A stretch of DNA of 64,000 nucleotides from Dimorphilus gyrociliatus (lineage: Eukaryota > Animalia > Annelida). The notes below the pieces were generated by a model that searched no databases, was not told where the DNA came from, and saw only the letters and a program-made list of their open reading frames with translations. Below, piece by piece: positions 21,354-60,533 of the stretch (position 1 is its first letter; the number at the start of each line of letters is the position of its first letter). The stretch lies in NCBI GenBank assembly GCA_904063045.1, contig CAJFCJ010000019.1, positions 730,691-794,690 of the forward strand. Direction: 5' to 3'. The position numbers were made by a program, and so were the translations under genes.

Positions 21354-24245
21354 TCACAAATCGCAAACACCACCATCTTCCATACGAGTCTCAGATGTTT
21401 GTTCTCCATCATTAAACGCAAATTTCACGGGTTTAAATCCTTTTGGTGCACTGTTGTTTACAACAGGATAGCTGAATGGCCTCGAATCTGGAATTTTAGA
21501 TTTGTAAATTTTTGTGAATAGGCCTACAGTTGATATTTTATCCGTACGTACTAGATGGTGTAGGTTGGCTGTTGGTTTGCCGTAATTTAGGTTGAGGAGA
21601 GTCGGAAGTAGGTGGTGGTTGTGTTACATCGACTTTGGCTGGAGTAAAGCTTTTTTCATTGGGTGAGGGAACTTTCCACCCATATAAATGTTCAAATGCA
21701 GGTTCTATATTATAAGGATCGGAGGCGGCTGCTTCCCATGGAGTCATTTTTGGCTTACGGCTAATCATCGTATCCAATCTAATAGTAATAGTCAGATAAT
21801 AAAGAAAACGGTAACATGTGAATAAGTAATGATTATAGAAAAGTAACAAACTTATTAGGTGGAGGTCCTGAATCGACCCTCTTAGTTTCTTCAACTTCTT
21901 GATTGAAGTTCGTTGACGCTAAAATTTTAGCCATATAATTCTTATTTGGACTAGTTGCAGGTAGGGCAACGTTCGACTCATCTACGATATATTTATCGGC
22001 TCTAGCTTTTCGTTTAGCGAATATCTGCCCTCCTTTTCCTTTACTACTCTTCAGAGCCGCAGCCAAACTATAATTTAGTAGGTTATAGAAATAAACTGCA
22101 TTCTATTACATACTCAAAGTGTTAAGCTTACTTAAAACACATTTGCGGATTAATGCTGTCGTGGGTATTTTTTTGTTCTAGCAATCTCATTCTTTCGAAT
22201 TCTTCAGCACTTAGAGCGCTTTCCTTCTCCTTCCCTTTACCAACAGGTAGAACAGGTGCTCGCCAGGCATTTGCAGGTAGGGGCGGAGCAACTGGAATTT
22301 CACCGAAGTTCAATGGTGTTTCATCAGAACTTCTCTCAATGTTCGACCAGGTTTTTTCCCAAGGCTGTTGCATAAAATGATGGGAATCGCTATCAAACTC
22401 TTTCTTCTCGTGGAGTTCTCCTCCAGAATAAGTCCACTTTTCTGATCTTTGTTGTCGTTTAACAAACATTCGATGACCTCTAGCCTTGTTATTAATCGGA
22501 GCGGTTAGTGACATCGCGACCCTTCTAGCCATTTTGATTTGCTCTTCTATAGTAGGGTATTTATGCTGATCGTCATCGTAAAAAGCAGAATCAGCAAATA
22601 TCTCTGTTAAAAGGGTATCAAGTTTATAGACGAAAATAACGAGCGTATCTCTCTATCACATTTCACGAAAGCGCTGTTTACTTACTCTTCCTTCTCATAG
22701 CCGATTCGGGAGAAGATCGACCATCATCTGAAGTACTTTCTCGGTTCGTCAGCTTGCCTATAAGGTTGTCGGAAGGATCGGCCTCGTAAGAGAAATCAAA
22801 ATTATCCGAACTATAGAAAGAATCACAATGATCAGAAGTTGGCTCTTCCTGGTAGGAAAATTGAGAAGTCTGAGAAAATGAATTAGAGGGATGAGGAACA
22901 GTTTGCGACAGATGTTGCTGCTGCGGCTGCTGTTGTTGTTGTTGTTGCTGTGTTATTTGGAAGGTAGCCGGTTTCCAAACTGCCTCATCGACTTTTCCTA
23001 TTTGTTTCACTCGAAATATCGGTTGCGGTGGTGTGTTCTCCTTCTCGTATTGCATTCCCACTGACATTGTAATTGATTCGTCCGCATTTCGAGTTATCGA
23101 TACGTTCTCCTGCGCAGTAACTTTGAACGATGTCTGTTGTTCTCTAGGCTTCCAAATATCACTTTCATGGTGAACATTTTCAGTAGATGAGAGTGGTATT
23201 TTCTCTAACGACTATAGAATTTCAAAAAATAAATACATTATAAAATACTATAAACGTAAAAAATAAACGTGAAAAAATTTATCAATTAGGATTTTATATA
23301 GTCTATTTATAGTGTTTTTTTTTGTATTCTAACTAGAATATAAATGTTTAAATAATAAAAAAAAGAGAGAAACAGTGAGGGGGAGAAAAAAAGAGAGACA
23401 AAGTAAAAAAACGGGAGGGATAACCTCATTATTAACATTTTGCTGATTAGATAAGGCTCTAAAAGCGTTCGAAATGTCTTGTTTATTCGTCGTACCTCTG
23501 CAGATAGAAATAATAAACATATCTTAACTGTAAAGGAAACCAGTTTCCTTGTTGTTTTTTTTTATTGTATATGTATACAGTCCTACTAACCTTAAAACTT
23601 GAAGACAAAGGCCACCTTGAGCTTCATCTAAAATTTCCATTGCTCTCTTATGATCGAGATGTTCACAGGAATGAGAATTTATTGAAATAAGTACGTCGTT
23701 CTCTTTTAAACCAGCTTCAGCTGCGGGACTTCTATTTCTAACCTAGAAATAAATAATTAATTAAAGTAAAGTAAGAGGAATCCAGGCATTTCTTTCTAAA
23801 TAAAGAAATAAGTAGATGAAGGACGACGAATCGTTGAAGAGTTGATAATAAAGTTGAAACAATTTCATACGTTTAATTAAGTATAAAATGTTAACATCAA
23901 TCTCTTTCCAGTTGAAAAATGATACTATCTCATTCTCATTAACTAGTGTTCGTTATTATATTCCTCTTCTATGTCAGGATGATCATTTTCTTTGTTACTA
24001 ACTCAAGTTTTTTTATAAAAAAAAAGAATGCAAAGCAACTACAAAGCTTTTGAGTAAGTTTTGTAGAGCAAACTGTTAAAGAAAATAGAAGTTCTATATA
24101 TTCTATAGGCCTGTATGATTTTGGGTGGAAAAAAGTCACATATATTTTTTATTACCTTAGCCACAATTAAAGGTTGTCCGTCTCCTCCAAAGATGCGAAA
24201 TCCCCACGGACCTGGAGCTTGAACGTGTATTTCGTGCGTATCCAT
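21354..24245 (-). CDS. PDZ-domain synaptopodin/myopodin-like protein with calsarcin-type motifs
   Basis: Exons (minus): 24245-24156, 23742-23591, 23497-23425, 23211-22686, 22603-22132, 22067-21852, 21778-21552, 21487-21354, all phase-consistent. N-terminal PDZ (GPWGFRIFGG...VAKVRNRSPAAEAGLKENDVLISIN), a polyQ tract, two motifs of the type RGHRMFVKRQQRSEKW / KGGQIFAKRKARADKY, and TPWEAAA typical of synaptopodins. Confidence 0.75.
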
Positions 24246-42987: not shown

Positions 42988-44767
42988 ATGAGAATTGAAG
43001 CATATTTCGCGTTAGCTTTCTTAGTAACCGCATCTATTGCTCAACAATGGGGAACCAACCCAGAAAATAGTAGAGCCCTTAGGTTTAATTATACGGTTAA
43101 TATATTAAAATGAAAGAATATATTAACATTTCTTACTAATTGAACATATTTTTATTACAAAATAGCTTACTCCCCTTGATGAGTATATTCTAAGATACGA
43201 TCCAAACTACTCTTATGACTTGGTCAGAACCTACACTAAGGAAGATCATGTAGTTTACGTACTAAATATGACGTCACAAGTTTGTATTATTGATTTTAGT
43301 CGTCTATTTAACTTAAAAATTGGAATTATAAATTATTTATATTGGCAGATGTGGAGAAATGAAACCGATTCTGATCATCCTGTATGGTGGCATTGGCTGG
43401 CCGTTGCTGTCCCTAATGATTTGAAGCACGGTAGCGATGGTTTCATATATATTGGATCAGGAAACAATAGAAATCCAGATGCGTATGTTATTTGGCTGAC
43501 ATAACTAATGATTTATTATGTACATTGTTTATTTCTTTGGAAAATAGACCTCCAAATGCCGATAGTCGAAATATTAGAAGAGCAGGACAACTCTGCGTTC
43601 AAGTCGGTGCTGTTGCTGCCTACCTATGGCAAATTCCGAATCAACCTATCCGCCTAAGAGAAGATGATGATGATACTCAAGATGGTAGAGTTGAAGACTC
43701 TCTAATCGCTCTTACATGGAGGTTATACTTGGAAGATCCAACATCAAAAGATATTCTTTTAAGATTGCCAATGACAAAAGCAGTTGTGAAGGCTATGGAC
43801 ACAATTGAAGATTTTATAAGAGGTCAGAATGGAAATACTGTAAATAGATTTATGCTTTCGGGAGCTAGTAAGGTAAAACTGAATGAGATGACTTTTTTCA
43901 AAGTTTCATATAACAATTAATATATAACTTTTGTAGAGAGGCTGGACCACTTGGACTACTGCTGCTTTTGATGTAAGAGTCAAGGCTATGGCTCCTACTG
44001 TACTTACGATTCTAAACATGTACAAGAATCTTAAGAATCACTATAGATCTTTGGGAGGTTGGACCTTTGTATTTGGTGATTATTGGAGTGAAGAGTTAAC
44101 TACTAAAATGGAAACTCAAGAATTTGTTATGCTTAGAGATATAGTTGATCCTTATTCGTATAGAGAACGTTTTACAATGCCTACATTAGTTGTTGCTGGA
44201 TCCAGTGACGAATTCTTTTTACCTGACGAATCAAGACTCTTTTTTAACGATTTACCAGCAGATGCAAAATACATGTGGCTAGTTGAGAATGCAGGTCATT
44301 CTATTACTTCAAGTCCGTCTGGAGAATTATATTGGGTCAATTTGGGACATTTTTGGAAAGCAGAAATTGTTAATTACGTTTACCCAAAATTGACAAATGA
44401 GTTAACAAATGATAATAAAACTGCAACTATTACCATAACCACATCAAGACCCCCATTGAATGTTGCTGCATGGTATGCTTATTCATTAGACAATGGAGCT
44501 AGAGATTTCCGTCTGAGAACACTTTCCATCCCTATTGAAAGTGGTATAAAATGGCACAGCGAACCTGTTACCGCTATTTCTCCAGTTAAATATACAAAAG
44601 AATTTTCAGCACCAACTAATGGAACATGGCTAGCTTTCTTCCTTAGAGTTGAATTCCTTCAACCAGATAATCAAAAATTGGTTGTTACTTCTGAAGCAAA
44701 CGTCGTACCAGATACCTACGTTCTACCAGAATGTTTCGGAGAAGATTGCCTAGGATTTTTGGTCTAA
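42988..44767 (+). CDS. Secreted PqaA (PhoPQ-activated pathogenicity-related) / Dictyostelium AprA-like alpha/beta-hydrolase-fold protein
   Basis: Exons 42988-43095 (donor uncertain), 43166-43279, 43349-43482, 43548-43872, 43937-44767. Signal peptide, TPLDEY, LNMTSQ.W, PNQP, LLRLPMTKAVVKAMD, SGASKRGWTTW, DPYSY..R.TMP, DEFFLPD, NAGH. Confidence 0.8.
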
Positions 44768-45844: not shown

Positions 45845-48800
45845 TTAGATTATAATGCAAAATTTGGATGGTTTACTCTCTTGCCGATGATTTATCTCTC
45901 TCAGGACTGGTTTCTCGTCATTCGTTTCTTGTACGGTATTTTTTGGTTTTTCATCTTCTGCGTAGCGTAAAAATATACAGTTATTTTTATTTTACAAATA
46001 AACAATAAAATAGTTAGTCAATTTCGAATTTTTGCGTAAGAAAACAACGATATCCTAAAGGCCCATATACAATCTATAAATTACCAGTTTTCGATTCCAT
46101 TTCATTCCAGTTTCTTCGATTCGTCTTACAACCGTCATAGAGAGTTTCTAAGTTATTTTCCAGATCATACAGAGTCTGTATTAATTTTTATATCAATTTT
46201 TTTAGACCGTAAATGAAAAAATGAACAACATATCGTTTTTTTTGTCTTTTTTTATATTTTTCATATATGTTTTCCAGATTTTGCACTAATTTTCCAGTTG
46301 TTTTATCACCTTTACTTTGTTTTTTTTTTTGTTTATTCCATGGGTTGTTTTATTTTTTTATGCTTTGTTTGATTGAGAGAGACCGGGATATTCTGTTTTG
46401 TTTATTTTCAAACTTTTTAAGTTTAAACCTAGCGGGCCGATTTGTAATTAACTAAATATATCTCTTTAATTAATTAATTAATTCTATGTAAAATTCTAAG
46501 TAAATAAAACTTATCGATGAATAATTTATTCACCATTGAATCCTTCATCAATATTGTTAAATTTCGACCAGTGTTCTTTATTCCTCTCAACGCCCTCGAA
46601 CATTGGTTTTAGACCAGGAAAGCAGATAGCCAAATTCTAAAATATTGTTTATATATATTTTTCTCTTTTAGTGTTTTTGTGGTTGTTTTTTATTTTTTTA
46701 TTTTTGCCTTTTATTTTTTTTTTATAAAAAAAATAAATATAATATAAATTAATAGCAATAGATCGGTTACTAGTATATATTTTGTTGTTTATTATTAATA
46801 AGCAAGGGAAGGTAGGGTAGGGGGGTGGGGAGGTGGAGAGAATAAGTAAGCGGTAAAATATTGTGACGGGAGGAGGAAGCTAGCGTATTAAAGGTTAATC
46901 ATTTTGTTAGGTTAAGTTATTAAAAAATCGTTTTTATGGATAAATAGGGTAATGGAAAGGGCGGAAGGCAAGGCAGCAAGGGATGATAATTTAGAAGAAA
47001 ATAGGTGCAAGGCTTAAAGTTAAAAAAAAAGAGGATATTATGAGCGTTAATAATATACGCTGTAGTATATTAACATCAAGTAAAAGGCCTCTTTATTTAC
47101 ATAAAAAAGGGACATTTGAATGAAAAAGTATATTTAATTGTGGTTGTATAGATAGTAAAAAATATTAGAAGAAAACAGGAGCAAAATGGGAATAAGAGGT
47201 AACAATATCGGTAAAGGTAATTAATTGCCTTAGTGATTTTACGTAACAAAAGGCGTCAAATTATTTAGGGAATTTTTGAGCGTCAAAGACGATATTTACT
47301 ATATTTTTGGTATAATATAGTATTGAACGCGTTAGATATTTTCCCCAATTTCAAATGTTTCTAGTGTAATTATTTATATATAATTAGTATATATATATAC
47401 TGTATATACATATATATATATATATACATCTTTATATCTTAGGTAGTAAATTTTTGGTAGGGTAAGTGCAATTAGAAATGTAGCTTTTGGTATGATAGAA
47501 TGGCGGTGGTTAAGCAAACAAATGATGGAAAATTAGCACAAAATATACGAAAGCAATATGTGAAAAAAGATTAATTAATACATATTTAAAATATAATATT
47601 TCTTATATATTTCCTTTGGTTTAAAGCAATTAACAAATAAATATTAAGACTATATACATACCTTATATAATGGTAAACATATTGAATCTATAAATCCAAC
47701 TTGCATTTTTGGAAGATCATCTTTTTTAGTCCTATCCATCATTGCCTATGAGGAAATAAGATAGAAATTAAATTTCTATACTGATTAATTGTTATTACCA
47801 TTGGTTCCAAATTTAATCTTGATCTTTCCAGATCGCCTTGTTCAAAGAATTCTCCGGCAACTAATAAAGCAACTTCCTTTTGAATTTCCCAGGGTTTCGT
47901 TATAGCAGCAACATCACAAGCCGTCATCATCATGCCTCTAATGAAATTTTAGTGCAATAATTAATTAGCAAGCATAATTAGGAAGATAAGTTTACCTCAA
48001 CAAATCCCTTTTACTGGGTTCACCCCAATTTTGTTCACCTTTATTGACTAGTTCCATAAATTGATTCTTTTTCCTATTGTAAACATTATATAAGGGATTT
48101 TTCAGCTTATACTATTTATATTTACTTGAAATATAAAGCTAGGTCAGTGGATAGTATGGCACTTTCAATAATTTTAACGACTCTCCTATATTCCTGAGAA
48201 GACAATGAACTAAAGATGTTATTGCAATCGCTATTTAAAATCATAATGCACTGGTCAAAGTGATGATGTTCCATAGTAGAAGTTGAATACAATTGAGCCA
48301 AAGGGGATTCGACTCTGTAAAAAATCATATTCTTTATCAGTTTTTTCCTTCAAAATAGAGCAAGTTATTTAAAACTTACTTGCTTTGGAAAGCATTATTC
48401 GTTCCCCTATGATCTAGATCATGGCATAAGCAAGCCACTAACAAGGCAAACATTTCTATATCATTAACGTATTTTTCCATTTTCCCCGTCTATTGAAAAA
48501 AACAAGATCAGCTGTTATTCTATTTATCGAAGGAAAACACAAAGTGAACATTCTTAATGACACCTATAGGAAAACAATATCAAAAGATTTTGACAATCTG
48601 AACTATTCATAGGTAGATAGAAAGAAAGTGAGCAAGAAGAGAAGAATGGATGTAGAAACAAATAAGAAAGATGAAAAAGTTAAAAAGAAAAACTTACAAA
48701 AATCATTGTGAACATAGTTTGAGTAACGTTAAAAGCATGTCTCCAGTTATGATACGTTACTGGGCGATAATTCTTCTTGACGCTGAGTGTCCACCGACAT

Positions 48801-49964
48801 AATTTCTTTGATATTTGAATAGAAAAATTCATTAATATAAGTTATACTGTAGATAAAAGAGGTTTTTATTCAATCTTTCTTTTACCTCATACGAAACGCT
48901 AAATCTTTTTGTTACCCCACAGTCTATAAACATCCTTACAGTCGCTTTAACAGTATCGTAATCGGTTAGATTGAAATCGCTAAAGCCAAACGAATATAGA
49001 TCATAATCAACGGATGTAGGTATTTCGGACTGCTGTTAAAGACATTATAGTCATTTTATGATTGAATTGGGGAAAGGGATAAGAGAAATTGAAGCTATTC
49101 GCAGAGCTGTTTAAAATAGTTCATTTTCTAGTTTGACTGAGCACGATTAAACTATGAGAATGCCTAAGGGGAAGTGTAAAACGATTTTTTCATCTTACTA
49201 ATAGTTTATCCGTTTCTTCTTGACTAGCTGCTGCGTGATAAGACAAACATTCTAAAGCGACAGACTGTTTCGCCATTAATGTACATGCATCCTCGTACAT
49301 TCTGCAATTGTGAACTCCCAATCCAAAAAATATTGACAAAGCCTTTAGAAAAATATTGAAAACAAAAAGTTATAAGAAAGATTCTCTTCAGTTTGTCTCT
49401 CTTCTTTTACCTTAACAAGATTGACGTCACTATCCGAAAACATCTTTCTATCTATCTTATTTAACAATTGAACGATTCCAATAACACGATTCGAATTATT
49501 ACGTATTGGTACAGCCATTATACCGCGAATTTCAAATCCATCGTGATCTTCCATCTTTAATAAGAAAGTTAAAGAGAAGAGTTTATCGACGTTATGTAAA
49601 GAAAGATGAAAGTAAAAATTCAACTAACTTTTTCTGTCTTTGACTGTGGAAGATCATTAATATCGTCGATATGCATATCCTGTTGATAAAGAATACAATG
49701 TATACGAAGAGCAGAAAAATTATGATTCAATCATCTTCTTTATTATTACCATGGTTACTTATTAGATAAAAAAAATATATATAAAATGAATATAGTATAG
49801 ATTGAGTAAATGATTACCTCTCCCGTAACAGCAATGCTTCTAGCCCATTGAGCATTCTTTGAGCTTTCAACATCTGAATCGCTGAAACAAAAAAGTCACG
49901 TTGGCATTATATACATATTATAAGTACAATATAACTATATAATCCTATACATGTAATCTATTTA

Positions 49965-50012
<48 letters not shown>

Positions 50013-51961
50013 TTCTTTCAATCTATCTACATGTTAATTTCATTTATTTGAAAAACCAATATGTTTGCCCTTCTCTTTCAGCTTCCTTTTCAGCTTCTCT
50101 ACAAATCTTCATATATATAGAACTAGCTGTTACTTGGTGTAAACATACGCATTTGTGTTTTTCTTTGTGGTTATTATTTAAAGTACGTTAGAAAAGAAAT
50201 AGTCAAAAACTCACGTCAACGTAACAATATCTCCTTGTTTTGTCGTATTTAATTCGAAGACATGAGAGAAGATAATCATCTATTAAAATCGCATAAAGAA
50301 CGTTTCATGTTAGAGAGGTAATAAATGATTTTGCACCAAATAGATATATTTGGATATGAACCTGGGGTTGAATAGGTGTACGAACTCTTCTATGATCATT
50401 TTTCAAGGCTTTAAGAGCCGACTTATGTTTGTCAAGATTTTCTGTTTCCTGTTTTTATTTAAAAAGAGGAAGGAAGAAAGAAGAAAATGAATAATTAATA
50501 TAATTTCAGTAAAATAATTAAAATATTATAATTTAATTTAAATAAATAAAATATGAAATAAAAAAAATAAAGCTGTATGAAGAATATTACAGTTTTTTTT
50601 TTAAAATAACTATACAGCAATATATTGCATATTGATACTGTTGGATTATAACATACAGTATAACGTGTAAAGTATTATACATTGTTGTTTTTTTATTATT
50701 ATGTAACAGCATCCTTATACAATATAAGCTATGAAGACTATACGTGCGTGAAAAGTTTTAGTAAAGATTATTGAGTTTTGTACTACTTGTTTTTTAGCGG
50801 TAAAAATATATACTATATATATATATAAATACCGATTGTACATACATATACATACTATATTAGTTATGAATTATATTAGATAATATTTTTTATGTATGTA
50901 CAGATTTAAAAGGAAGCTTGGTTTTTTTTTATTTTTTTTAAAAAAAAAAAATCAGAATAAATAAAGCAAAAGAATCTTCCTCTTTTTATAATTATTGTTA
51001 TCGAAATGTTTTAGCAGGTGCTCTAATTAGCAAAGACAAGATCGCTCGCTTTCATCTCTTTTATATGTTTTTTCGTTTCGTTAGTTAATTTATAAGTAAA
51101 AATTTTTTTGAAAGAAATAGAATAAAAAATGATAATATTAGCTTGATATATAACTCTTTCTTTTAAAAATCTTTCCTCATTCCTTTCTTAACAGATTATA
51201 TTCCAGTTTCGTAGTTAAGATAGTAATAAGTAAGGTAGAGTTAGTTTTCACTCTTCTTCTTTTTTAATTATGACAAAATCACAAATGAATGACAAAATTT
51301 TTCCTTCTCCCATCTACCCTTATCCTTCTCATCTCCCTCCTTGAAAAGCAGTTTAAATGTGAATAAAAAATTATTCTATTCTTTTCTAAAGAATAAAAAA
51401 GAGAAAGAGAATTGAGGTTGTAGAGGTGAAAAGAGAAAAAGATTAAATAAAAGGTGAAAAGACGGATTGAGGGAGATTGGTAGGAAAATGAATTGTCAAA
51501 AGGTTAGTGAGACAGTTAAACTTCTAGATACTATTTCACCTTTACAAAAAGAAAAGAGAGGAATGAAAGAAAAAGCAATTCGATTCTATTCCTTAGTACT
51601 AATACTTTAAACGCAGTACGAAGTAAATAGAAGAATTTCTTTCCTTCCATCTCAAACTTCTCTTAACAATATTGAATGTTCGAAGGCAAATGAAAAAAGT
51701 CGTTTCTTAGCAACGAATTGTTTACACGCACCAAAGCTATACGCCAAAGTGATCAATAGCAGCATAAATATACAGTATACTGGATAAGTATAATGTACGA
51801 ATATATTAAAATGTACAGCATTTACTATGTAACCTACTTTATATCATACACTGTATCGTTAGTGTCGTAGCTATCAAGTATAACATTAAAGTAATAACTT
51901 TCAACGGCAACTTAAGAGCAATGTCTTTGTTACTAGAACAGAAAGTCTTCAGGCTTAATAT

Positions 51962-52008
<47 letters not shown>

Positions 52009-52229
52009 CTTGCTCGCTCCCGCTCTCTTCATTGTATAAGCTATGCTATTTTTTCTTCTTTGTGGTTTTGTGGCCATAAAAGAAACGTTATTCTTTTTCT
52101 ATTAACAATAGTAATTTCTTTGAAACTTTTATAATAAATATAATAATCAGAAATAAATAGATAGAATAACGAAATAATCCAAAAAAAGATCAATTAACCA
52201 ACAAAGAAATATGAAGAAAACAAAGTCTT

Positions 52230-52263
<34 letters not shown>

Positions 52264-52760
52264 AGATAGATAGACAGAATGAAAGAGAGAGAGAGATTGA
52301 AAGATATACTTTTGGAAATATTTATGAATTATAAAACATTAAGTTTTCTCCCATTACGCTTTTCAAAGAAAAGATATATATATAGAGAGAAATTTTTATC
52401 CTAATGAATTCGCAAAACAGTATTATTACATGAAGATATTTATATTCATATTTAATATATACATTATATAGATCTGCTATTGAAATTGTTAAAATGGCTC
52501 TTCCTAAATGAAAAACCTCTAATAGAAAAAAAGTCAATATCAAGCTGGTTTTAATGTTATAAATATTAATATTTTATCAAAAATATATTACTACACATTC
52601 TTTTTTAGATATGTATCATAAACTTTTGGGTTTTTTTTTAAAAAAAAAAAGAGAACAAAATTTATTGCTTCTTACTGAGCGTTTTTTTTTCAATGAAAAC
52701 GAAAAATCTTATTTTTTTAAAAAAATAATTGAATAAAAATAAAGTTTCCGATTGAAGCTA

Positions 52761-52791
<31 letters not shown>

Positions 52792-53843
52792 TGTGTGTAC
52801 CTCTCCCATTATGATATGCCTTATTCTCACTTCTTTCTGATCGTATTCCTCGCACAAGGGCGACATTGGGCCGGTTATAAATCGACCCTAATTATTCAAC
52901 ACACCGTTGTTATTAGAGAAATAAAACAATTATATAAACAAACAAAAATATGTTTACATTTATAAAGGGAATTATCTCAAAACATAGAACTATAAAAGGA
53001 AAAGTTTGAAAATATTAACAGTAGACTAATATAAGAAAGTATATATAAATATATATATAAATTTATATATATATATAAGAGATTTATTATAAAATCTATT
53101 ATCTATTATTGTCAATTATTGCATATGATACTCATGACTTTTTCACTGTTCAATCAAGTATCTATTTACACTTGTTTATATAAAAAAAAGAAATAACTAT
53201 TATAGTTTTAGTATTTGTTTTTTCTTTCCTCTGACTATCTATCTATGTCTATCATTTTTAAAAGAAAATAAATATCTTTTTCTCTCTTTGTATCCATTGA
53301 AATAATTTTTTAAAGAGTGCTAATTGAAATAGAAGAAAATAATGGAAGTGTTAAGAGTTTGAAGGATAAGAAAAAGGTGAGAGAGAAAGAAAGAAAGAGA
53401 AAATAAAAGGAAAATTTCTCTTTGAAATAGGAAATATAGAAAAAAAGATCTAGTATTTTATCTTTTGTTTCACTGTATCCTTCTTTCAGCTTCCCTTCTC
53501 TTCTGTTTTTCTTACCTATGCATTTAACTCTTTATCTCTTTTATCTATCTATCTACCTATCTATCTATCTCTCTATCTCTCCTTTTATTTAATTATTGTT
53601 GGAAAAAACAAAACCTTTCTTGATAGTTGAAAGAAAAAAATGAATAATAAAAAAGTCAAGAAAACCAAAACAAACAGAGAAAAAAAATTATAAGAAAACA
53701 AAAATACTCTATCTTCTAAACTAATTAATTAATTAATTAATTAATTAATTAATTAATCTCAACTAATTATAAATAAAAAAAAAACCAGAAAAGGTGTTAC
53801 ACATATTAAAAATATATAGAGTATTATTATAATATTATGTATG

Positions 53844-53896
<53 letters not shown>

Positions 53897-54478
53897 CTGT
53901 ATATACTATATATATTTATATATATATGGGTATATGAAAAGGATTATTTATCTTTCTACGATGACTATGAGATTAAATAAAAAGTAATTGGAAAAACAAA
54001 ATATATAATGAATAAACTGATTGTTTAAAAACTTACCGAATCAACAGAATCATCGACAAGGTAGACAACTAATCTTTCGCATTTAATTAATCTTTGAGCA
54101 TTTCCCATTATCCTCTGTACTAAATTTGTTAAGTTTTGTTGTTCCTCAAATATATTTTTAGCCATTGTAAGCAGCATCTAATTGTAAAGAAAAAAAACAA
54201 ACAAGAGAAAATACCTCGTTAATAAGTCTGCCATTTTTGTTTTTACTAAGGGGAGGTGTTTCTCTTTACCTCATTCTTTTTGTATTCTTGTACGGATGTT
54301 TCAAATAATTGTGCATTCGTCAGCCCTATACCACAAAACGTGAGATACTGAGAAAATACCTAGAAAGTGAAAGAAGGAGAAAAAAAAAGAAAATCATATT
54401 TTTATTTTATTACATTAATAAATTAAAAAGAAATAATGAAGAAGGAAGAGAAAGAGAGAAAAAAATCATATATGTTTT

Positions 54479-54518
<40 letters not shown>

Positions 54519-55060
54519 ACTTATATACAGTATATACTAATATATATAAATAAGAAGGGAAAAGAAAGGAAAAGATGAAAATAGTTTTGCACTTGCACTT
54601 TTTTTTATTATTTATTTATAGTTTTTAGAATAGAAATATAAATAAAATCAAGAAATATTGATGTAGACTGTATATTATATAGAGGTAGTCATATTTAGTA
54701 AGTAATAAATCAAAAGTAGTTTTTTTTATGATCTATAATTGAATGAATGACACTCGAACTAATCTGACCTACACGAAATTACAAGTGATTTAATACAGGT
54801 AATTCAGCTTGTTTAAATAGCCTTTTTTTTTGTTTTTTTTTTCTTTCCTTACCTTTCTTATGTGCATAAAAAAGAGTGCAAAATGAATATATATATATAC
54901 ATATATATATACTTTATATATATATATATATATAAAGAAAAAATAAATCACAAGCTATTAAAGTTTTAAAGAAAAAAAAAGACGATAGTATTTCATTTCT
55001 GTGTGTGACATTTGAATCTAATTATTATAATTTATTAAACATACATACATACATACATAT

Positions 55061-55115
<55 letters not shown>

Positions 55116-55533
55116 TATATTAGTATATAGTTGAATGAAATACTTGAATTTCCAAAGAAAAGATAGAATGCGTCACTTCTTTTCTTTCTTTTGTTAAAGA
55201 ATACAATTAAATAGGTTAGAAAAAAAATAACAACGGTAAATTTCATGTTTTAAAATTGGTTATAATAATCTTCTAGTATAAATAGGAAAGAGAAGGGAAA
55301 ATATTAATAATATGAATAGTAAATTAGTTAATTAAATAAGCATGTGTTATTTCTTAGGTAGAGTGATAGAGAGAATATTAAAAGAAGTAGAGCAATGAAT
55401 AAGAAAATAATAGAATAAAAATAAATCTTCACACAAGAACGACACTCGAAACCTGTTCGTCGAATTTCGTAAAGCCATCAACCTAAATGTTTGCCAAAGG
55501 AAAAACAAACATTCACATACTGCTTAGCGCTTA

Positions 55534-55571
<38 letters not shown>

Positions 55572-58500
55572 TATTCATATATATGCATATATTGAATATT
55601 GATTTTAGAATAACTTAAACAAGAGGAAAAACAAGATAAAATGAAGAAAACATTAGACTGTTTAATACCCTCTCTTTCTTGATTAAACTTTTGCATATTC
55701 AGCTTGCTTTTATTAGACAAATATTATATAATATACTTGTGTGATTAGTGTTTTTGGTTTTTCAATACCTTTCCTTCTTTAATCTATTGATTATAAATCA
55801 TAGTATATTATATAGTTATTAAATATTCGTATACTTTTCATCTATTAGATACTTTATAAAGAATCCTCTCCAAACAAAACATTATTATATTAATCAAATG
55901 AAAGAAGAGAGGAGAAATTATATTTTCATCTTCTTCATCATTTCTTTTCTAATTTCATTAAAAAGTAAGACCTTTATTTGTTTTTCTTTAACTTATTTAC
56001 CTTTTCCAATAGAATGCCCTTATAAAGCATTATTTTATTTAAATAAAGAATAATAACTTATTTATAGAGAGTCTAACTCTAAGAACATATTGACCGAACA
56101 AGGTAGATTACACAAATTCCTTTCTTTGTCTCTTCCCACACCACCTCACCTCACCCCCTCCCCCCCACATTGTAGTCTTCTCCTATTCTTTTCTATGTAT
56201 TCCTATTCTTACATTCTCTTTATTTTTCTTGTAACTATTTGTCCTAGTGTCTAAATCGAATAGTCAAACAAAATGGTGAGTATATATGTGTACTTACTAT
56301 TTAAAAGAAAACAATAAAATCAAGGCCTACCTTTAAGTTTCAAGAATAAATATTTTATTAATAAAGTACTTTAGGCAAATAGTTTAAGTATAATATGCAA
56401 CTAATTAGTATAATTGAAGAGGTGAAAGCATGTTTTTTAAAGAATCGATTATTTTTTATGTTATCGTAAAGCTAATAAATCAAATAATATATATATATAT
56501 ATATATCATAAGATTAAAGAAAAAGATATATATATAGTAGGAGAGCAAGGAACGAAAAATAAAAGATGAAATTCATACACATTACTTATTTATATTGCAA
56601 GAAAACACTCTGAATATGATTAATGCTAATCTATAATAAGAAAGTAAGAAATATGAATAAATTATTATCAATTATTTACTTTGGACATCAATTCTTAATC
56701 GTAATTATGAAAACACTTATGATAAAAAAGAATGCCTAAATAAATCAGAAAAAAAGATCTAATAGGCTTATGATTAGTAAATATTTCACACTTTTAATAC
56801 ATATATTCTTTCTAGCTTTGTTTATTTAATAGCGTATACACAATATTCTTACAAGTCTTTTTTTACAGTTTCCGCCCCCCCCCCCCTCTCTCTCTCTCTC
56901 TCTCTATCTTCCCGTTTCATTTCTCATTTCTCTAAATTCATTACTTGATATTCGTAAAGTAATGAATACAACTCTGTCTTATTATATTTTGTTTTGTTCT
57001 TTTATCAATCTTGTCCCTAAGATCAATAAGAAAATATAATAGAATCTATTTGTTTTATCCTATAATATATTACATATGAGAAAATGTACATATATATATA
57101 TAAGAATTATATAAATTGCTTATATGTAGGATATATACAACACTATTTGAAGTTAGCCAAAAATTAATTCATTTTTTATCATTTTTTATAGTTCATTCGT
57201 TCTTTCACACACACACACACACACACACTCTCTCCTCTTCTCTCTGTGATTTTTACGCTTTCTAACTGTTTTTCTTCTTTTTTGTACTTTATTACTATAA
57301 TAAAACAGTTTAACTCTTCATTTTTGTATTGTTTTTGCTCTTAGTTTTTTTTTGGTTTACTTTTTTATATGTTATTCTTTTTTTTTAAACAGATATTCTT
57401 ACCCTCTCATCTTCGTTAGTGAATACTGTGCAATCCGAATCCTGTTGTTTGTTCATTATTTGAGCTACTCCGATAACCTGTCAGCAAAATAGAAAGTAAA
57501 CAGTGATAAACTATTGAATTAGGCTTTTACTACTAGCCTCTCCTTCATAATTCAATATCGGCATACACAATAAACTCTTGGTACGAAATCCGGTCATCTT
57601 ATCAATTTCTTGATTAAATCGTGGGTCCTAGAAAGGAAATATACGTTCGATTAGTTAAAAAAAAAAAAAAGAATATAATCATTATTTAATAGGCCTAGAT
57701 AAAAAAAATCTCTTTTATTGCATAAGCCGTTCGAGAACATATCAATAATCTCTATGGAGATTACATCCGATTTTTCTATAGGTACCGAAGCGTCATTAAT
57801 AAGTGTTTGAGTTTCGTGCGGAATAGGTAAAAAGAATAAGAGATATATATATATATATACTTATTATTTACGTGTTTTATTTTTTTTCTATTCTTATTGA
57901 AACGATATAAAGAAATGCTGATTATATAATATAAATTTCCTATTCAATTCTCATTCATCCCTTTCGTTTCCTGCATCGTAATAGTAAAATATATAAACAT
58001 ATGTACTTATACTGTTGATTTATTAAAAGATTGAATTTTAAATAACAGATAGCTAGAGCAAAAAAACAAAATATACTTATTGAAACATTGAAGGTCAATT
58101 GGGTGATAAAATATTAAACGATGAATTATAAGTTTAATTTGGAAAGTCTAGTCTCTACTTTTACAAGTAAAAAAAAAAGAACAAAATAAATAGATTAAGT
58201 AAATAAATTACTTTATAAAAATTAATAGTCAGGATTGTAAAATAATAAAAAAGAAAGAAAAAATCTATTTATAAACTTTTCATTTCATCCTTTCTCTTCT
58301 CCTTCTCCTTCTCCTCATCCTCCTCTTTCTACTCATCCTTCTTTCCTTTTCTTTTACATTAACTATTTAATATTTATATTACAAATAATAATCTTTTACC
58401 TAATGATTTTTTATATCCCCTATATTTCCTTTACTTCGTTTCTTGTCGTTTATGATATTTATCGGTTTTATCAAAAGGAAAAGAAAAGGGAAGAAGAAAA

Positions 58501-60533
58501 AGATTATCTGGTAAAAAGAAATTCAATCTTTTGCATACTTGTTTTTTTTCTGTGCCTATAATAGTCTCGGTAACCATTAGAACTCGGAAAAAGAGGTTAC
58601 TACTGATATAAATATCTATAGATAAATATATATTTATATTTAGTACACCTTTAATCTACCATTTTTATGACATATTACGACGGTATCGCTGTATCTAGGT
58701 CCTTACTATGTCCATAACTCTAGGCCCAAAATATATAATTGCTTTTAACTGTTCTCCGATCTAAATGTTTTATATATTTATACAAAGTATGTATACGAAC
58801 ATTTTGTGCATACTTTGCAATAATACTCTAAATGTATTATACATAAGATAATGTAGTGTAAACAACAACTAGCTTATGTATAATGTCTTTTGGAGTAATA
58901 TAATTTATATTCTACGTATATAAATACAATTATTATATATATGTATATATATAGTACATTGTATATAGAGTCTGGGGAACTATTAATAAATGATGAGCGT
59001 TGTTTGGTATCTATAGAAACCTTATTCGTAAACTAACTAGCTAACTTTACTGTTTCACCCTTCCACTACTTATATATCTCCCTTTAACAGAGATTTCTTT
59101 TTGTATTAATTCCTAAATCAAATAGTAAGAACAGCAAATAAGAAATCGTTTAAACATTCATACCTCGTATGCGTCTTTGATATTGATTGGATGTTTGGTT
59201 TCAGCAACAGTTCCAGCGATACCAACTCCAAATGGAACAGTTATTTCAGAGTTATCAGTATGTACTACATCTTCTAAACAGGAATCAGCTGTTACATCAA
59301 ATAATTTACTGACCAAATAACGTTTCATTCTTGATCCTCTAACAAGAAATAAGCTGCCTCTATCACTTTTTGTTAATATTCCAACATTGATGAGGATTTT
59401 ATGGCATAGAGCATTTACATCCAATTCGTTTGCAATTTCACGAATTAATTCCATAAATAGCTCTTTTTCACCCAAATTTTCTAAATTCTTTTTTTTACGT
59501 TGAGAAACAGGAGAAGAGTATCTTCTCCGACCCTCAACAATATCTCTAAACATATTTGTAGTAATGGAATTTCTAAAGGCAGGATAAATTTTCATATTTC
59601 CCTTTCTCTCTAATACAAATATCTTAACTAACCATTTCCCTCCCTGTGCCCATCTATTAACGAAAAGACAAGAGAACAATAATGCTTATCCCCTCTTCTT
59701 TCTCCTATCATATTATCCAATAAACGTTTGAACAATTAAATAAATATAAAAACAATTTTGTATGAGGAGAGAAGAGAAGAATATATTTTTACGATTGCTA
59801 TCTATTCATTCTAAAACCAATAAATATAAAGTTCTTTATGAATTTGATTACTAGTAGCTAGAAAATATTTATATATATATTGTTCCTTTAAATTATTAAC
59901 ATTCTTTAAAAACTAATAAACTATGAATTAAAACTATTTAAATATTGGCATTTATCAAATATTCAGGTAGGAATATTTTGATTAGCAATAATACATTTTG
60001 CGTTATATTACCTTGGAAAAGGAATATAGGAATATTCATATAATTGTCATTGTAAGATACCGCTAACTAGACTGACATATGTAACATTAATAAATATCAG
60101 AATATATATTAACATTATCCTTTTTATGAACCATAGACTATCGTTAAACTTAAAATATAACTTGACCTTAATATACATTTTATGACAAACTGATAGATTG
60201 AAGTCAATAAAATATCAAATCCTTTTTCGCTTATGATACGTATTTAACCTATATAGCATTGTTGACGGATAGTTCATCTACTGATTTTCTTGGGTTAGAA
60301 CCACTCATGTTATTAGTACAGAACGAAAAAATAGAAAAAGAACCCTGCCTTGAAGGTGTATTCGTATAATTAAGAGCTGCAAGTTCATCTTCTTCAGTAA
60401 CCGTTTCCTCTGGTTCATTTTCAGTTTTTTCTAAATTATCCATATTAGCTTTGAACCATTTTGAGGCGAATGCCTTATTTTTTTTTAAAAATTCATCAAC
60501 ATCTTTCTCCCTTATTGTACTCTTTCGACTCAT
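45845..60533 (-). CDS. cGMP phosphodiesterase with two GAF domains, invertebrate PDE5/PDE6 type, C-terminal CaaX
   Basis: Exons (minus): 60533-60349 (donor inferred), 59572-59164, 57627-57538, 57477-57403, 54359-54270, 54177-54037, 50279-50215, 49881-49818, 49679-49629, 49554-49411, 49342-49199, 49032-48886, 48805-48698, 48489-48380, 48314-48126, 48073-47996, 47937-47799, 47745-47662, [46636-46534 or 46175-46085], 45957-45845. GAF motifs [44 protein letters not shown]; catalytic [45 protein letters not shown]; ends KPSKFCIII*. Confidence 0.93.
49972..50008. repeat. (CT)n microsatellite in a PDE intron
   Basis: Direct read. Confidence 0.85.
51963..52008. repeat. Compound (CT)n(GT)n microsatellite
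   Basis: Direct read. Confidence 0.9.
53722..53757. repeat. (TAAT)n tetranucleotide repeat
   Basis: Direct read; about nine units. Confidence 0.85.
55069..55112. repeat. (TA)n microsatellite (one of many in the PDE introns)
   Basis: Direct read. Confidence 0.85.

What the first reader, a model, noticed from the sequence alone, without database searches (positions are those of the whole stretch)
45845..47662. Duplicated, mutually exclusive exons encode alternative last helices of the PDE catalytic domain, linked to CaaX prenylation
After ...[14 protein letters not shown] (exon ending 47662, phase 0) come two candidate exons, both starting in phase 0 and both matching the PDE terminal helix pattern (L....P.LKPL(Y/F)DG...N...W). 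Exon A (46636-46534) reads [34 protein letters not shown]; exon B (46175-46085) reads [30 protein letters not shown]. Both end in phase 1 (103 and 91 nt) at GT donors and fit the final exon (45957-45845, ...KPSKFCIII*, a CaaX box as in fly Pde6 and vertebrate PDE6). Including both would frameshift, which enforces exclusivity. Exon A can also read through its donor to a stop at 46526, giving a non-prenylated form. Splicing could thus swap a helix packing near the invariant substrate-binding Gln and toggle membrane anchoring. I know of no description of this in PDE5/6.
Basis: partly seen in the sequence, partly recalled or inferred. Interest (0 to 1): 0.75.

Follow-up and report, generated by a model that had tools for sequence, protein, structure and literature searches.

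The report
Swappable last-helix exons in worm PDE5/6
A cGMP phosphodiesterase gene of a small marine worm carries two neighbouring, either/or copies of the exon for the last helix of its catalytic domain; the same pair exists in an annelid, a snail, acorn worms and echinoderms, so it is an old and apparently undescribed splice switch, though its use in this worm's RNA was not seen.

Summary
Observation confirmed. On the minus strand, after the exon ending at 47662, lie two homologous exons, A (46534-46636) and B (46085-46175). Both start in phase 0, end in phase 1 and fit the final CaaX exon (45845-45957). A helix profile built only from other species scores A at 35 bits and B at 30. The next best of 2023 open segments in the window scores 5.8.

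The pair is not private to this worm. Genomic DNA of Ridgeia (annelid), Batillaria (snail), Saccoglossus and Strongylocentrotus holds the same two tandem exons, in the same phases and order. RefSeq isoforms of at least ten echinoderm and hemichordate species use one or the other, with or without the CaaX tail. Drosophila has lost the intron and keeps one copy.

I found no paper describing this. Other exon pairs were noted earlier in this genome, none on this gene.

An unexpected extra is a 19-bp inverted repeat flanking exon A. One arm lies in an intron block conserved in a related worm, so an RNA duplex may loop out A in favour of B.

Missing: transcript evidence in this worm. Verdict: real; a new member of a known kind.

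The parts
45845..60533 (-). Whole GAF-GAF-PDE gene of the PDE5/6 type (approximate span: first ATG exon to stop)
   Evidence: Pfam PDEase_I and GAF hits on single exons. tblastn of starfish, krill and octopus orthologues maps the exons. The best solved relatives are PDE5A and PDE6. The middle of GAF-B (between 54028 and 49623) was not mapped.
47662..47745 (-). Constitutive exon with the invariant substrate Gln (QVGFID motif); ends in phase 0 after ...PLYK
   Evidence: Pfam PDEase_I profile positions 197-222. Protein sequence is identical in the related worm.
47463..47558 (-). Conserved intronic block about 100-200 nt downstream of the 47662 donor
   Evidence: About 93% identical to the relative's contig L001, where the first 100 intron bases are about 55% identical. 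No Rfam family matches.
47526..47544 (-). Arm 1 of the inverted repeat, inside the conserved block
   Evidence: 19 contiguous pairs (2 G-U) with 46278-46296. 0 of 300 shuffles and 1 of 659 other 96-nt window segments reach 19. The pattern search expects 0.01 matches by chance and finds 2. Duplex energy is -33.9 against a shuffle mean of -23.8.
46534..46636 (-). Exon A: upstream copy of the terminal-helix exon (aromatic-Pro type, ..FPGLKPM..)
   Evidence: Closest to the upstream copy of Ridgeia (12/26 identities against 8/26 to its downstream copy).
46525..46533 (-). Read-through codons GGT GAA TAA after exon A's donor, overlapped by an AATAAA hexamer (46530-46525)
   Evidence: AATAAA occurs 2.5 times per kb on this strand, so the hexamer alone is weak evidence.
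46278..46296 (-). Arm 2 of the inverted repeat, in the A-B intron, 103-121 nt upstream of exon B
46085..46175 (-). Exon B: downstream copy of the terminal-helix exon (..YDGC..NRRNW type)
   Evidence: Aligns without gaps to foreign helices from the expected exon boundary. Closest to the downstream copies of Ridgeia and Saccoglossus. It lacks two prolines that the other copies keep.
45845..45957 (-). Final coding exon, entered in phase 1, ending ..KPSKF-CIII-stop (CaaX box)
   Evidence: Orthologues end in the same K-x-x-S-x-[LF]-C-a-a-X pattern, for example CILL, CVLL, CSVI, CLLI.

Best explanation
The gene is the worm's orthologue of sea-urchin sperm PDE5 and fly Pde6, a cGMP phosphodiesterase with two GAF domains and a CaaX tail. 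The exon for its last catalytic helix exists as two tandem copies inherited from a distant ancestor. That ancestor was at least the annelid-mollusc ancestor, and probably the protostome-deuterostome ancestor. Splicing takes exactly one copy. Both start in phase 0 and are 3n+1 long, so taking both or neither breaks the frame. Either choice joins the same CaaX exon. Failure to use exon A's weak donor ends the protein two codons later, without the lipid anchor. Both copies keep the Gly, Asn and Trp of the helix (Trp = PDE5 Trp853 of the Gln817-Gln775-Trp853 relay) and differ around them. The two enzymes should therefore differ in fine catalytic or partner-binding properties, not in fold. In this worm, a 19-bp RNA duplex between the introns flanking exon A may loop A out and favour B. 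Shown: anatomy, homology, conservation, use in orthologues' models. Inferred: use of both copies in this worm, functional difference, duplex mechanism, prenylation.
For: Both exons are real helix exons, homologous in register and phase-compatible only singly. The same tandem pair is read from genomic DNA of four other species. Ridgeia: L002 12908-13007 and 15175-15268, with a CaaX end near 21484. Saccoglossus: L003 72953-73052 and 73147-73327. Batillaria: L004 20411-20522 and from 23180. S. purpuratus: L007 68029-68128 and 69334-69460. In all five genomes the upstream copy has an aromatic residue plus Pro at helix positions 6-7 and the downstream copy does not. The upstream copy is exactly 100 nt in three phyla and ends ..AAT G|GT in the worm, Ridgeia and the urchin. 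RefSeq isoforms of Acanthaster, Patiria, Asterias, Lytechinus, Diadema, Strongylocentrotus, Apostichopus, Glandiceps, Ptychodera and Saccoglossus carry one type or the other, never both. The record named as S. purpuratus sperm PDE5 has the upstream type plus CaaX. In the tree no species has its two copies as sisters. The inverted repeat is supported.
Against: No RNA of this worm was seen. Exon B has lost two otherwise conserved prolines and sits on a long branch, which could mean relaxed constraint. One-to-one orthology of the copies across protostomes and deuterostomes is not resolved by sequence: the genomic-order labelling is the best of 16, but 3 of 10 species pairs go the other way, and the tree is unresolved. 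RefSeq isoforms are predictions, and I did not see their read support. The second arm of the duplex could not be checked in the relative, and no comparable pairing was found in the four other genomes.
Confidence: 0.8

Rival explanations
1. Exon B is an inherited but no longer used relic in this worm; only exon A is spliced.
For: B lacks the two prolines kept by every other copy examined and has the longest branch after Batillaria. No transcript evidence was obtained.
Against: B has an intact 30-codon frame and AG/GT at the homologous boundaries. Phase 1 is preserved and Leu, Asp-Gly-Cys, Asn-Arg and Trp are kept. Its GC content is exon-like. It scores 30 bits against a foreign profile. A conserved intron element pairs just upstream of it.
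Confidence: 0.1
2. The pair is not a symmetric either/or switch. Exon A serves mainly as an alternative last exon (read-through to the stop at 46526, with a poly(A) signal there) that gives a soluble enzyme. Only exon B is joined to the CaaX exon.
For: Exon A has a weak donor (GTGAAT), a stop two codons on and an AATAAA overlapping it. Ridgeia, Saccoglossus and S. purpuratus have G|GTTAG with an immediate in-frame TAG after the upstream copy. Short-tailed upstream-type isoforms are annotated in starfish, urchins and acorn worms. The Ridgeia gene model ends there.
Against: In every ambulacrarian with models, the upstream type is also joined to the CaaX tail, including the S. purpuratus sperm PDE5 record. 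AATAAA is common on this strand at 2.5 per kb.
Confidence: 0.09
3. Exon B is a chance open frame, or the duplication is an assembly artefact.
For: None found. phmmer of B alone against solved structures found no PDE, which reflects its length.
Against: B scores 30.3 bits against the helix profile, while the best unrelated segment scores 5.8. A and B share only 5 of 26 residues, so they are not a recent assembly duplicate. The same pair is present in four other genomes.
Confidence: 0.01

Closest known systems
RefSeq isoform sets of echinoderm and hemichordate 'cGMP-specific 3',5'-cyclic phosphodiesterase-like' genes (e.g. Acanthaster planci XP_022096546-551, Ptychodera flava X1-X23, S. purpuratus sperm PDE5 NP_001029121 plus X1/X2)
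   Same: Orthologous gene. Two alternative helices start right after ...VYK, both are joined to one CaaX tail, and short non-CaaX variants also exist. The tandem exons were read in the Saccoglossus and S. purpuratus DNA.
   Different: Those are automated predictions in other phyla, and I found no paper on them. The worm has one short tail exon instead of several. Its exon B is more diverged. It also has a flanking inverted repeat that is not seen in those genomes.
Drosophila Pde6 (CG8279), a prenylated cGMP phosphodiesterase (prenylation is from my own knowledge of Day et al. 2008, not checked here)
   Same: Orthologue by best matches. It has a CaaX end and the upstream-type (aromatic-Pro) helix.
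   Different: In D. biarmipes the helix is fused to the preceding exon and no second copy lies in the locus. There is therefore no switch.
Vertebrate PDE5A and PDE6 alpha/beta/alpha'
   Same: Closest solved structures. They share the Gln817, Gln775, Ala767 and Trp853 relay residues by alignment. The relay is described in PMC10488055. PDE6 is prenylated at a CaaX box.
   Different: As far as I know, vertebrate diversity at this helix lies in separate genes, not in alternative exons. This was not tested here.
Mutually exclusive exons steered by intronic RNA pairing (fly Dscam1 exon 6, 14-3-3 zeta; own knowledge)
   Same: Tandem homologous exons, with a conserved intron element downstream of the constitutive exon that is complementary to a site upstream of a variable exon.
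   Different: Only one selector-like site was found, before exon B and none before exon A. The geometry is therefore loop-out of exon A rather than competition between selectors. It is untested.

Membership tests
Class I cyclic-nucleotide phosphodiesterase, PDE5/6 branch with tandem GAF domains | PDEase_I catalytic domain with the His/Asp metal-binding motifs | tested here: met
   Pfam PF00233 matches five separate exons (E 3e-19 to 7.5e-7). The HNWRHAF and HDLDHRG motifs are read.
Class I cyclic-nucleotide phosphodiesterase, PDE5/6 branch with tandem GAF domains | Two N-terminal GAF domains | tested here: met
   Pfam GAF matches two exons, one at the cut-off and one below it. The GAF-A exon is 54% identical over 145 aa to the starfish orthologue, and the GAF-B ends are mapped. 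The middle of GAF-B was not mapped.
Class I cyclic-nucleotide phosphodiesterase, PDE5/6 branch with tandem GAF domains | Closest to PDE5/6 rather than PDE2/10/11 | tested here: met
   Solved-structure searches rank PDE5A first for one exon and PDE6 then PDE5 for the next, well above PDE10 and PDE2. The best full-length relatives are named cGMP-specific PDE, sperm PDE5 or Pde6.
Class I cyclic-nucleotide phosphodiesterase, PDE5/6 branch with tandem GAF domains | Invariant substrate Gln and its cGMP-selective relay (PDE5 Gln817, Gln775, Ala767, Trp853) | tested here: met
   All four are present by alignment: Gln in QVGFID, Ala and Gln in ..[11 protein letters not shown].., and Trp 36 residues after the Gln in both exon A and exon B. 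The numbering and role come from PMC10488055.
Class I cyclic-nucleotide phosphodiesterase, PDE5/6 branch with tandem GAF domains | cGMP-specific hydrolysis; prenylation of the CaaX cysteine | not testable with these tools
   Only the motif C-I-I-I-stop is shown.
Mutually exclusive exon pair from tandem exon duplication | Two adjacent exons homologous to each other and to the same part of the protein | tested here: met
Mutually exclusive exon pair from tandem exon duplication | Equal entry and exit phases, with joint inclusion or joint skipping destroying the frame | tested here: met
   103 and 91 nt, both phase 0 to phase 1. A+B stops after 37 codons and skipping both is out of frame.
Mutually exclusive exon pair from tandem exon duplication | Both copies maintained in other lineages | tested here: met
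   Ridgeia, Batillaria, Saccoglossus and S. purpuratus genomic loci.
Mutually exclusive exon pair from tandem exon duplication | Mature transcripts hold exactly one copy | tested here: inconclusive
It is met in the public isoform models of orthologues.
Mutually exclusive exon pair from tandem exon duplication | A mechanism that enforces the choice | tested here: inconclusive
   Frame incompatibility is shown. A 19-bp duplex flanking exon A is statistically unusual, and one arm is conserved. Its effect is untested.

The most novel reading that the evidence does not exclude
The pair is a splice switch that dates from the bilaterian ancestor of the PDE5/6 lineage. The upstream copy would be a derived aromatic-Pro helix: the only copy kept by arthropod Pde6 and the one in the urchin sperm PDE5 record. 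The downstream copy would be an ancestral-type helix, closest to a probably cnidarian sequence and to vertebrate PDE5/6/11 helices. Swapping them would retune the Trp853-Gln775-Gln817 relay or a partner surface. One gene would then yield kinetically distinct, anchored or soluble cGMP phosphodiesterases, and in this worm the choice would be set by an intronic RNA duplex.
Probability: 0.35. Interest if true: 0.75.

Novelty: new member of a known kind. Interest (0 to 1): 0.6.

Why it matters
PDE isoform diversity is generally described as N-terminal and regulatory. Here the alternative part lies inside the catalytic domain. It is the helix carrying the Trp that helps fix the substrate-selecting Gln, and both versions have been kept in at least four phyla, which argues that the difference matters. 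The urchin orthologue ends the cGMP signal in sperm chemotaxis (PMC7024835), and the record named sperm PDE5 carries the upstream-type helix. Tissue-specific choice of helix and of the lipid anchor is therefore directly testable. In practical terms, the annotated Ridgeia gene is split at this point, so gene models at this locus may deserve a check.

Tried and rejected
Local scripts did read the whole window file.

Short-query searches: exon A alone finds only PDE2A terminal helices at E about 1, and exon B alone finds nothing relevant. Pfam does not see either exon alone. A 36-aa query was too short for the word search.

Protein searches aimed at this worm's own products:
- 525-1670 aa: none found.
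- 25-80 aa: no candidate.
- 110-350 aa: best hits only 75-86% identical.
- Sizes 81-109 and 351-524 aa were not covered.

Loci that could not be fetched or were uninformative:
- The Acanthaster gene is over 100 kb, so no DNA was returned.
- Three proteins were not on record.
- The Acropora locus has N gaps and is uninformative.
- The relative's contigs stop 830 nt short of exon A, so selection on exon B could not be measured.

Other negatives: degenerate DNA patterns for both exons in metagenome contigs were blank. The tree of 26 helix copies is unresolved. Flanking-intron pairing in four other genomes is not above shuffles.

Joined model: not searched or folded. Exons were joined only inside a local script for frame bookkeeping.

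Full report
THE OBSERVATION. On the minus strand the exon with the QVGFID motif ends in phase 0 at 47662. Exon A (46636-46534, 103 nt) and exon B (46175-46085, 91 nt) both follow an AG, start in phase 0, end in phase 1 at a GT, and fit the last exon (45957-45845), which ends in a CaaX box (C-I-I-I). A local frame check gave four results. Either exon alone gives the same tail. Both together stop three codons into B. Neither gives a shifted frame. Read-through of A's donor stops at 46526.

IS IT MORE THAN CHANCE. The two peptides align in register, and no shuffle out of 5000 reaches the observed score. Both exons are GC-richer than their introns. I built a profile of the 30 residues after the YK boundary from 32 foreign PDE5/6/11-type proteins found with an upstream exon. 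I then scored all 2023 open segments of the window in six frames. Exon A scores 35.0 bits, exon B 30.3, and the next best 5.8. Exon B is a genuine terminal-helix exon.

WHAT THE GENE IS. Single exons match Pfam PDEase_I and GAF. Orthologues map onto exons from about 60.5 kb to 45.8 kb. The closest solved structures are PDE5A and PDE6. The best full-length relatives are the echinoderm and hemichordate 'cGMP-specific PDE-like' genes, including S. purpuratus sperm PDE5, and arthropod Pde6. The residues aligned with PDE5 Gln817, Gln775 and Ala767 are present. The Trp kept by both A and B lies 36 residues after the Gln, which is Trp853 of the relay described in PMC10488055. Earlier notes of this scan name the genome as the annelid Dimorphilus gyrociliatus. 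I did not check that.

THE PAIR ELSEWHERE: ANNOTATION. Members of the starfish cluster differ exactly after ...VYK. Three Acanthaster isoforms carry one helix and three carry another, and both kinds reach the same CaaX end. The same holds for Patiria, Asterias, Lytechinus, Diadema, Strongylocentrotus, Apostichopus, Glandiceps, Ptychodera and Saccoglossus. Each type also occurs with short tails that lack the CaaX box.

THE PAIR ELSEWHERE: GENOMIC DNA. Scanning fetched loci with the same profile finds two and only two strong hits, in tandem, downstream of the QVGFID exon.
- Ridgeia piscesae: L002 12908-13007 and 15175-15268, both 44 bits, with a CaaX end near 21484.
- Saccoglossus: L003 72953-73052 and 73147-73327.
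- Batillaria: L004 20411-20522 and from 23180.
- S. purpuratus: L007 68029-68128 and 69334-69460.
Every copy whose end I could read runs from phase 0 to phase 1 (the end of Batillaria's downstream copy was not fixed). The upstream copy always has an aromatic residue plus Pro at positions 6-7, and the downstream copy never does. The upstream copy is 100 nt in annelid, acorn worm and urchin (103 nt here). In Ridgeia, Saccoglossus and the urchin it is followed by G|GTTAG, which is an immediate in-frame stop if the donor is not used. D. biarmipes Pde6 has the helix fused to the preceding exon and no second copy. Acropora is uninformative because of gaps.

HOW OLD. Worm A matches the Ridgeia upstream copy and worm B the Ridgeia downstream copy clearly (scores 66 and 63 against 52 and 36). 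No species has its own two copies as sisters. The pair therefore predates the annelid-mollusc split and, separately, the echinoderm-hemichordate split. Three observations point to a single origin before protostomes and deuterostomes diverged:
- the boundaries, phases, order and the 100-nt length are the same;
- arthropod Pde6 scores as upstream type by 11-12 bits;
- the genomic-order labelling is the best of 16.
Against that, 3 of 10 species pairs disagree and the tree is unresolved. I put this at roughly 70%.

A MECHANISTIC LEAD. The relative's contig (L001) encodes identical protein in the two preceding exons. Its intron is about 55% identical for 100 bases and then about 93% identical for about 90 bases. 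Within that block, 47544-47526 forms 19 contiguous pairs (two G-U) with 46296-46278, which lies about 100 nt upstream of exon B. None of 300 shuffles and 1 of 659 other window segments reaches that length. Nothing comparable lies before exon A. Pairing would loop out exon A. This is an inference. The second arm could not be checked in the relative, and other genomes show no such pairing.

WHAT IS MISSING. There is no transcript evidence for this worm. Exon B has lost two conserved prolines, so a recent loss of use cannot be excluded. I give that about 10%.

KNOWN OR NEW. Full-text searches found no paper on alternative or mutually exclusive exons in a PDE catalytic domain. The isoforms do stand in RefSeq for other phyla. 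Mutually exclusive tandem exons are a known kind, so this is a new, old and well-conserved member of that kind. Other pairs were reported earlier in this genome, none on this gene.

Noticed in passing
L002 10001-13012 and 13340-21484 (Ridgeia piscesae, GCA_025642075.2): The deposited annotation appears to split one PDE gene in two. The second spans the downstream helix exon and the CaaX end.
   Followed up: partly
L002 13007-13012; L003 73052-73057; L007 68128-68133 and 69460-69465: The donor after the upstream helix exon is G|GTTAG in an annelid, an acorn worm and a sea urchin, which gives an in-frame TAG straight after the exon. In the urchin the same holds after the downstream exon. This is a weak donor plus a ready stop, conserved across phyla.
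   Followed up: partly
L005 16608-17234 (Drosophila biarmipes Pde6): The intron after ...PLYR is absent and only the upstream-type helix is present, so the switch seems lost in flies.
   Followed up: partly
window 43988-44767 (+): A 259-aa open exon 1.1 kb beyond the PDE stop, convergent with it, matches Pfam PhoPQ_related (PF10142, E 4e-37). This is an alpha/beta-hydrolase family that I know mainly from bacteria and amoebae.
   Followed up: no
window 49623-54028 (-): The exons for the middle of GAF-B (about 100 residues of the starfish orthologue) were not found by tblastn. They may be too diverged or lie in small exons.
   Followed up: no
proteins P0295, P0472, P0474 (Logan and JGI transcripts): Transcript-derived proteins whose preceding exons resemble Acropora's (so probably cnidarian) carry the helix most like exon B (50% identical over 28 residues by BLASTP) and end in a CaaX box.
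   Followed up: no
   Followed up: no
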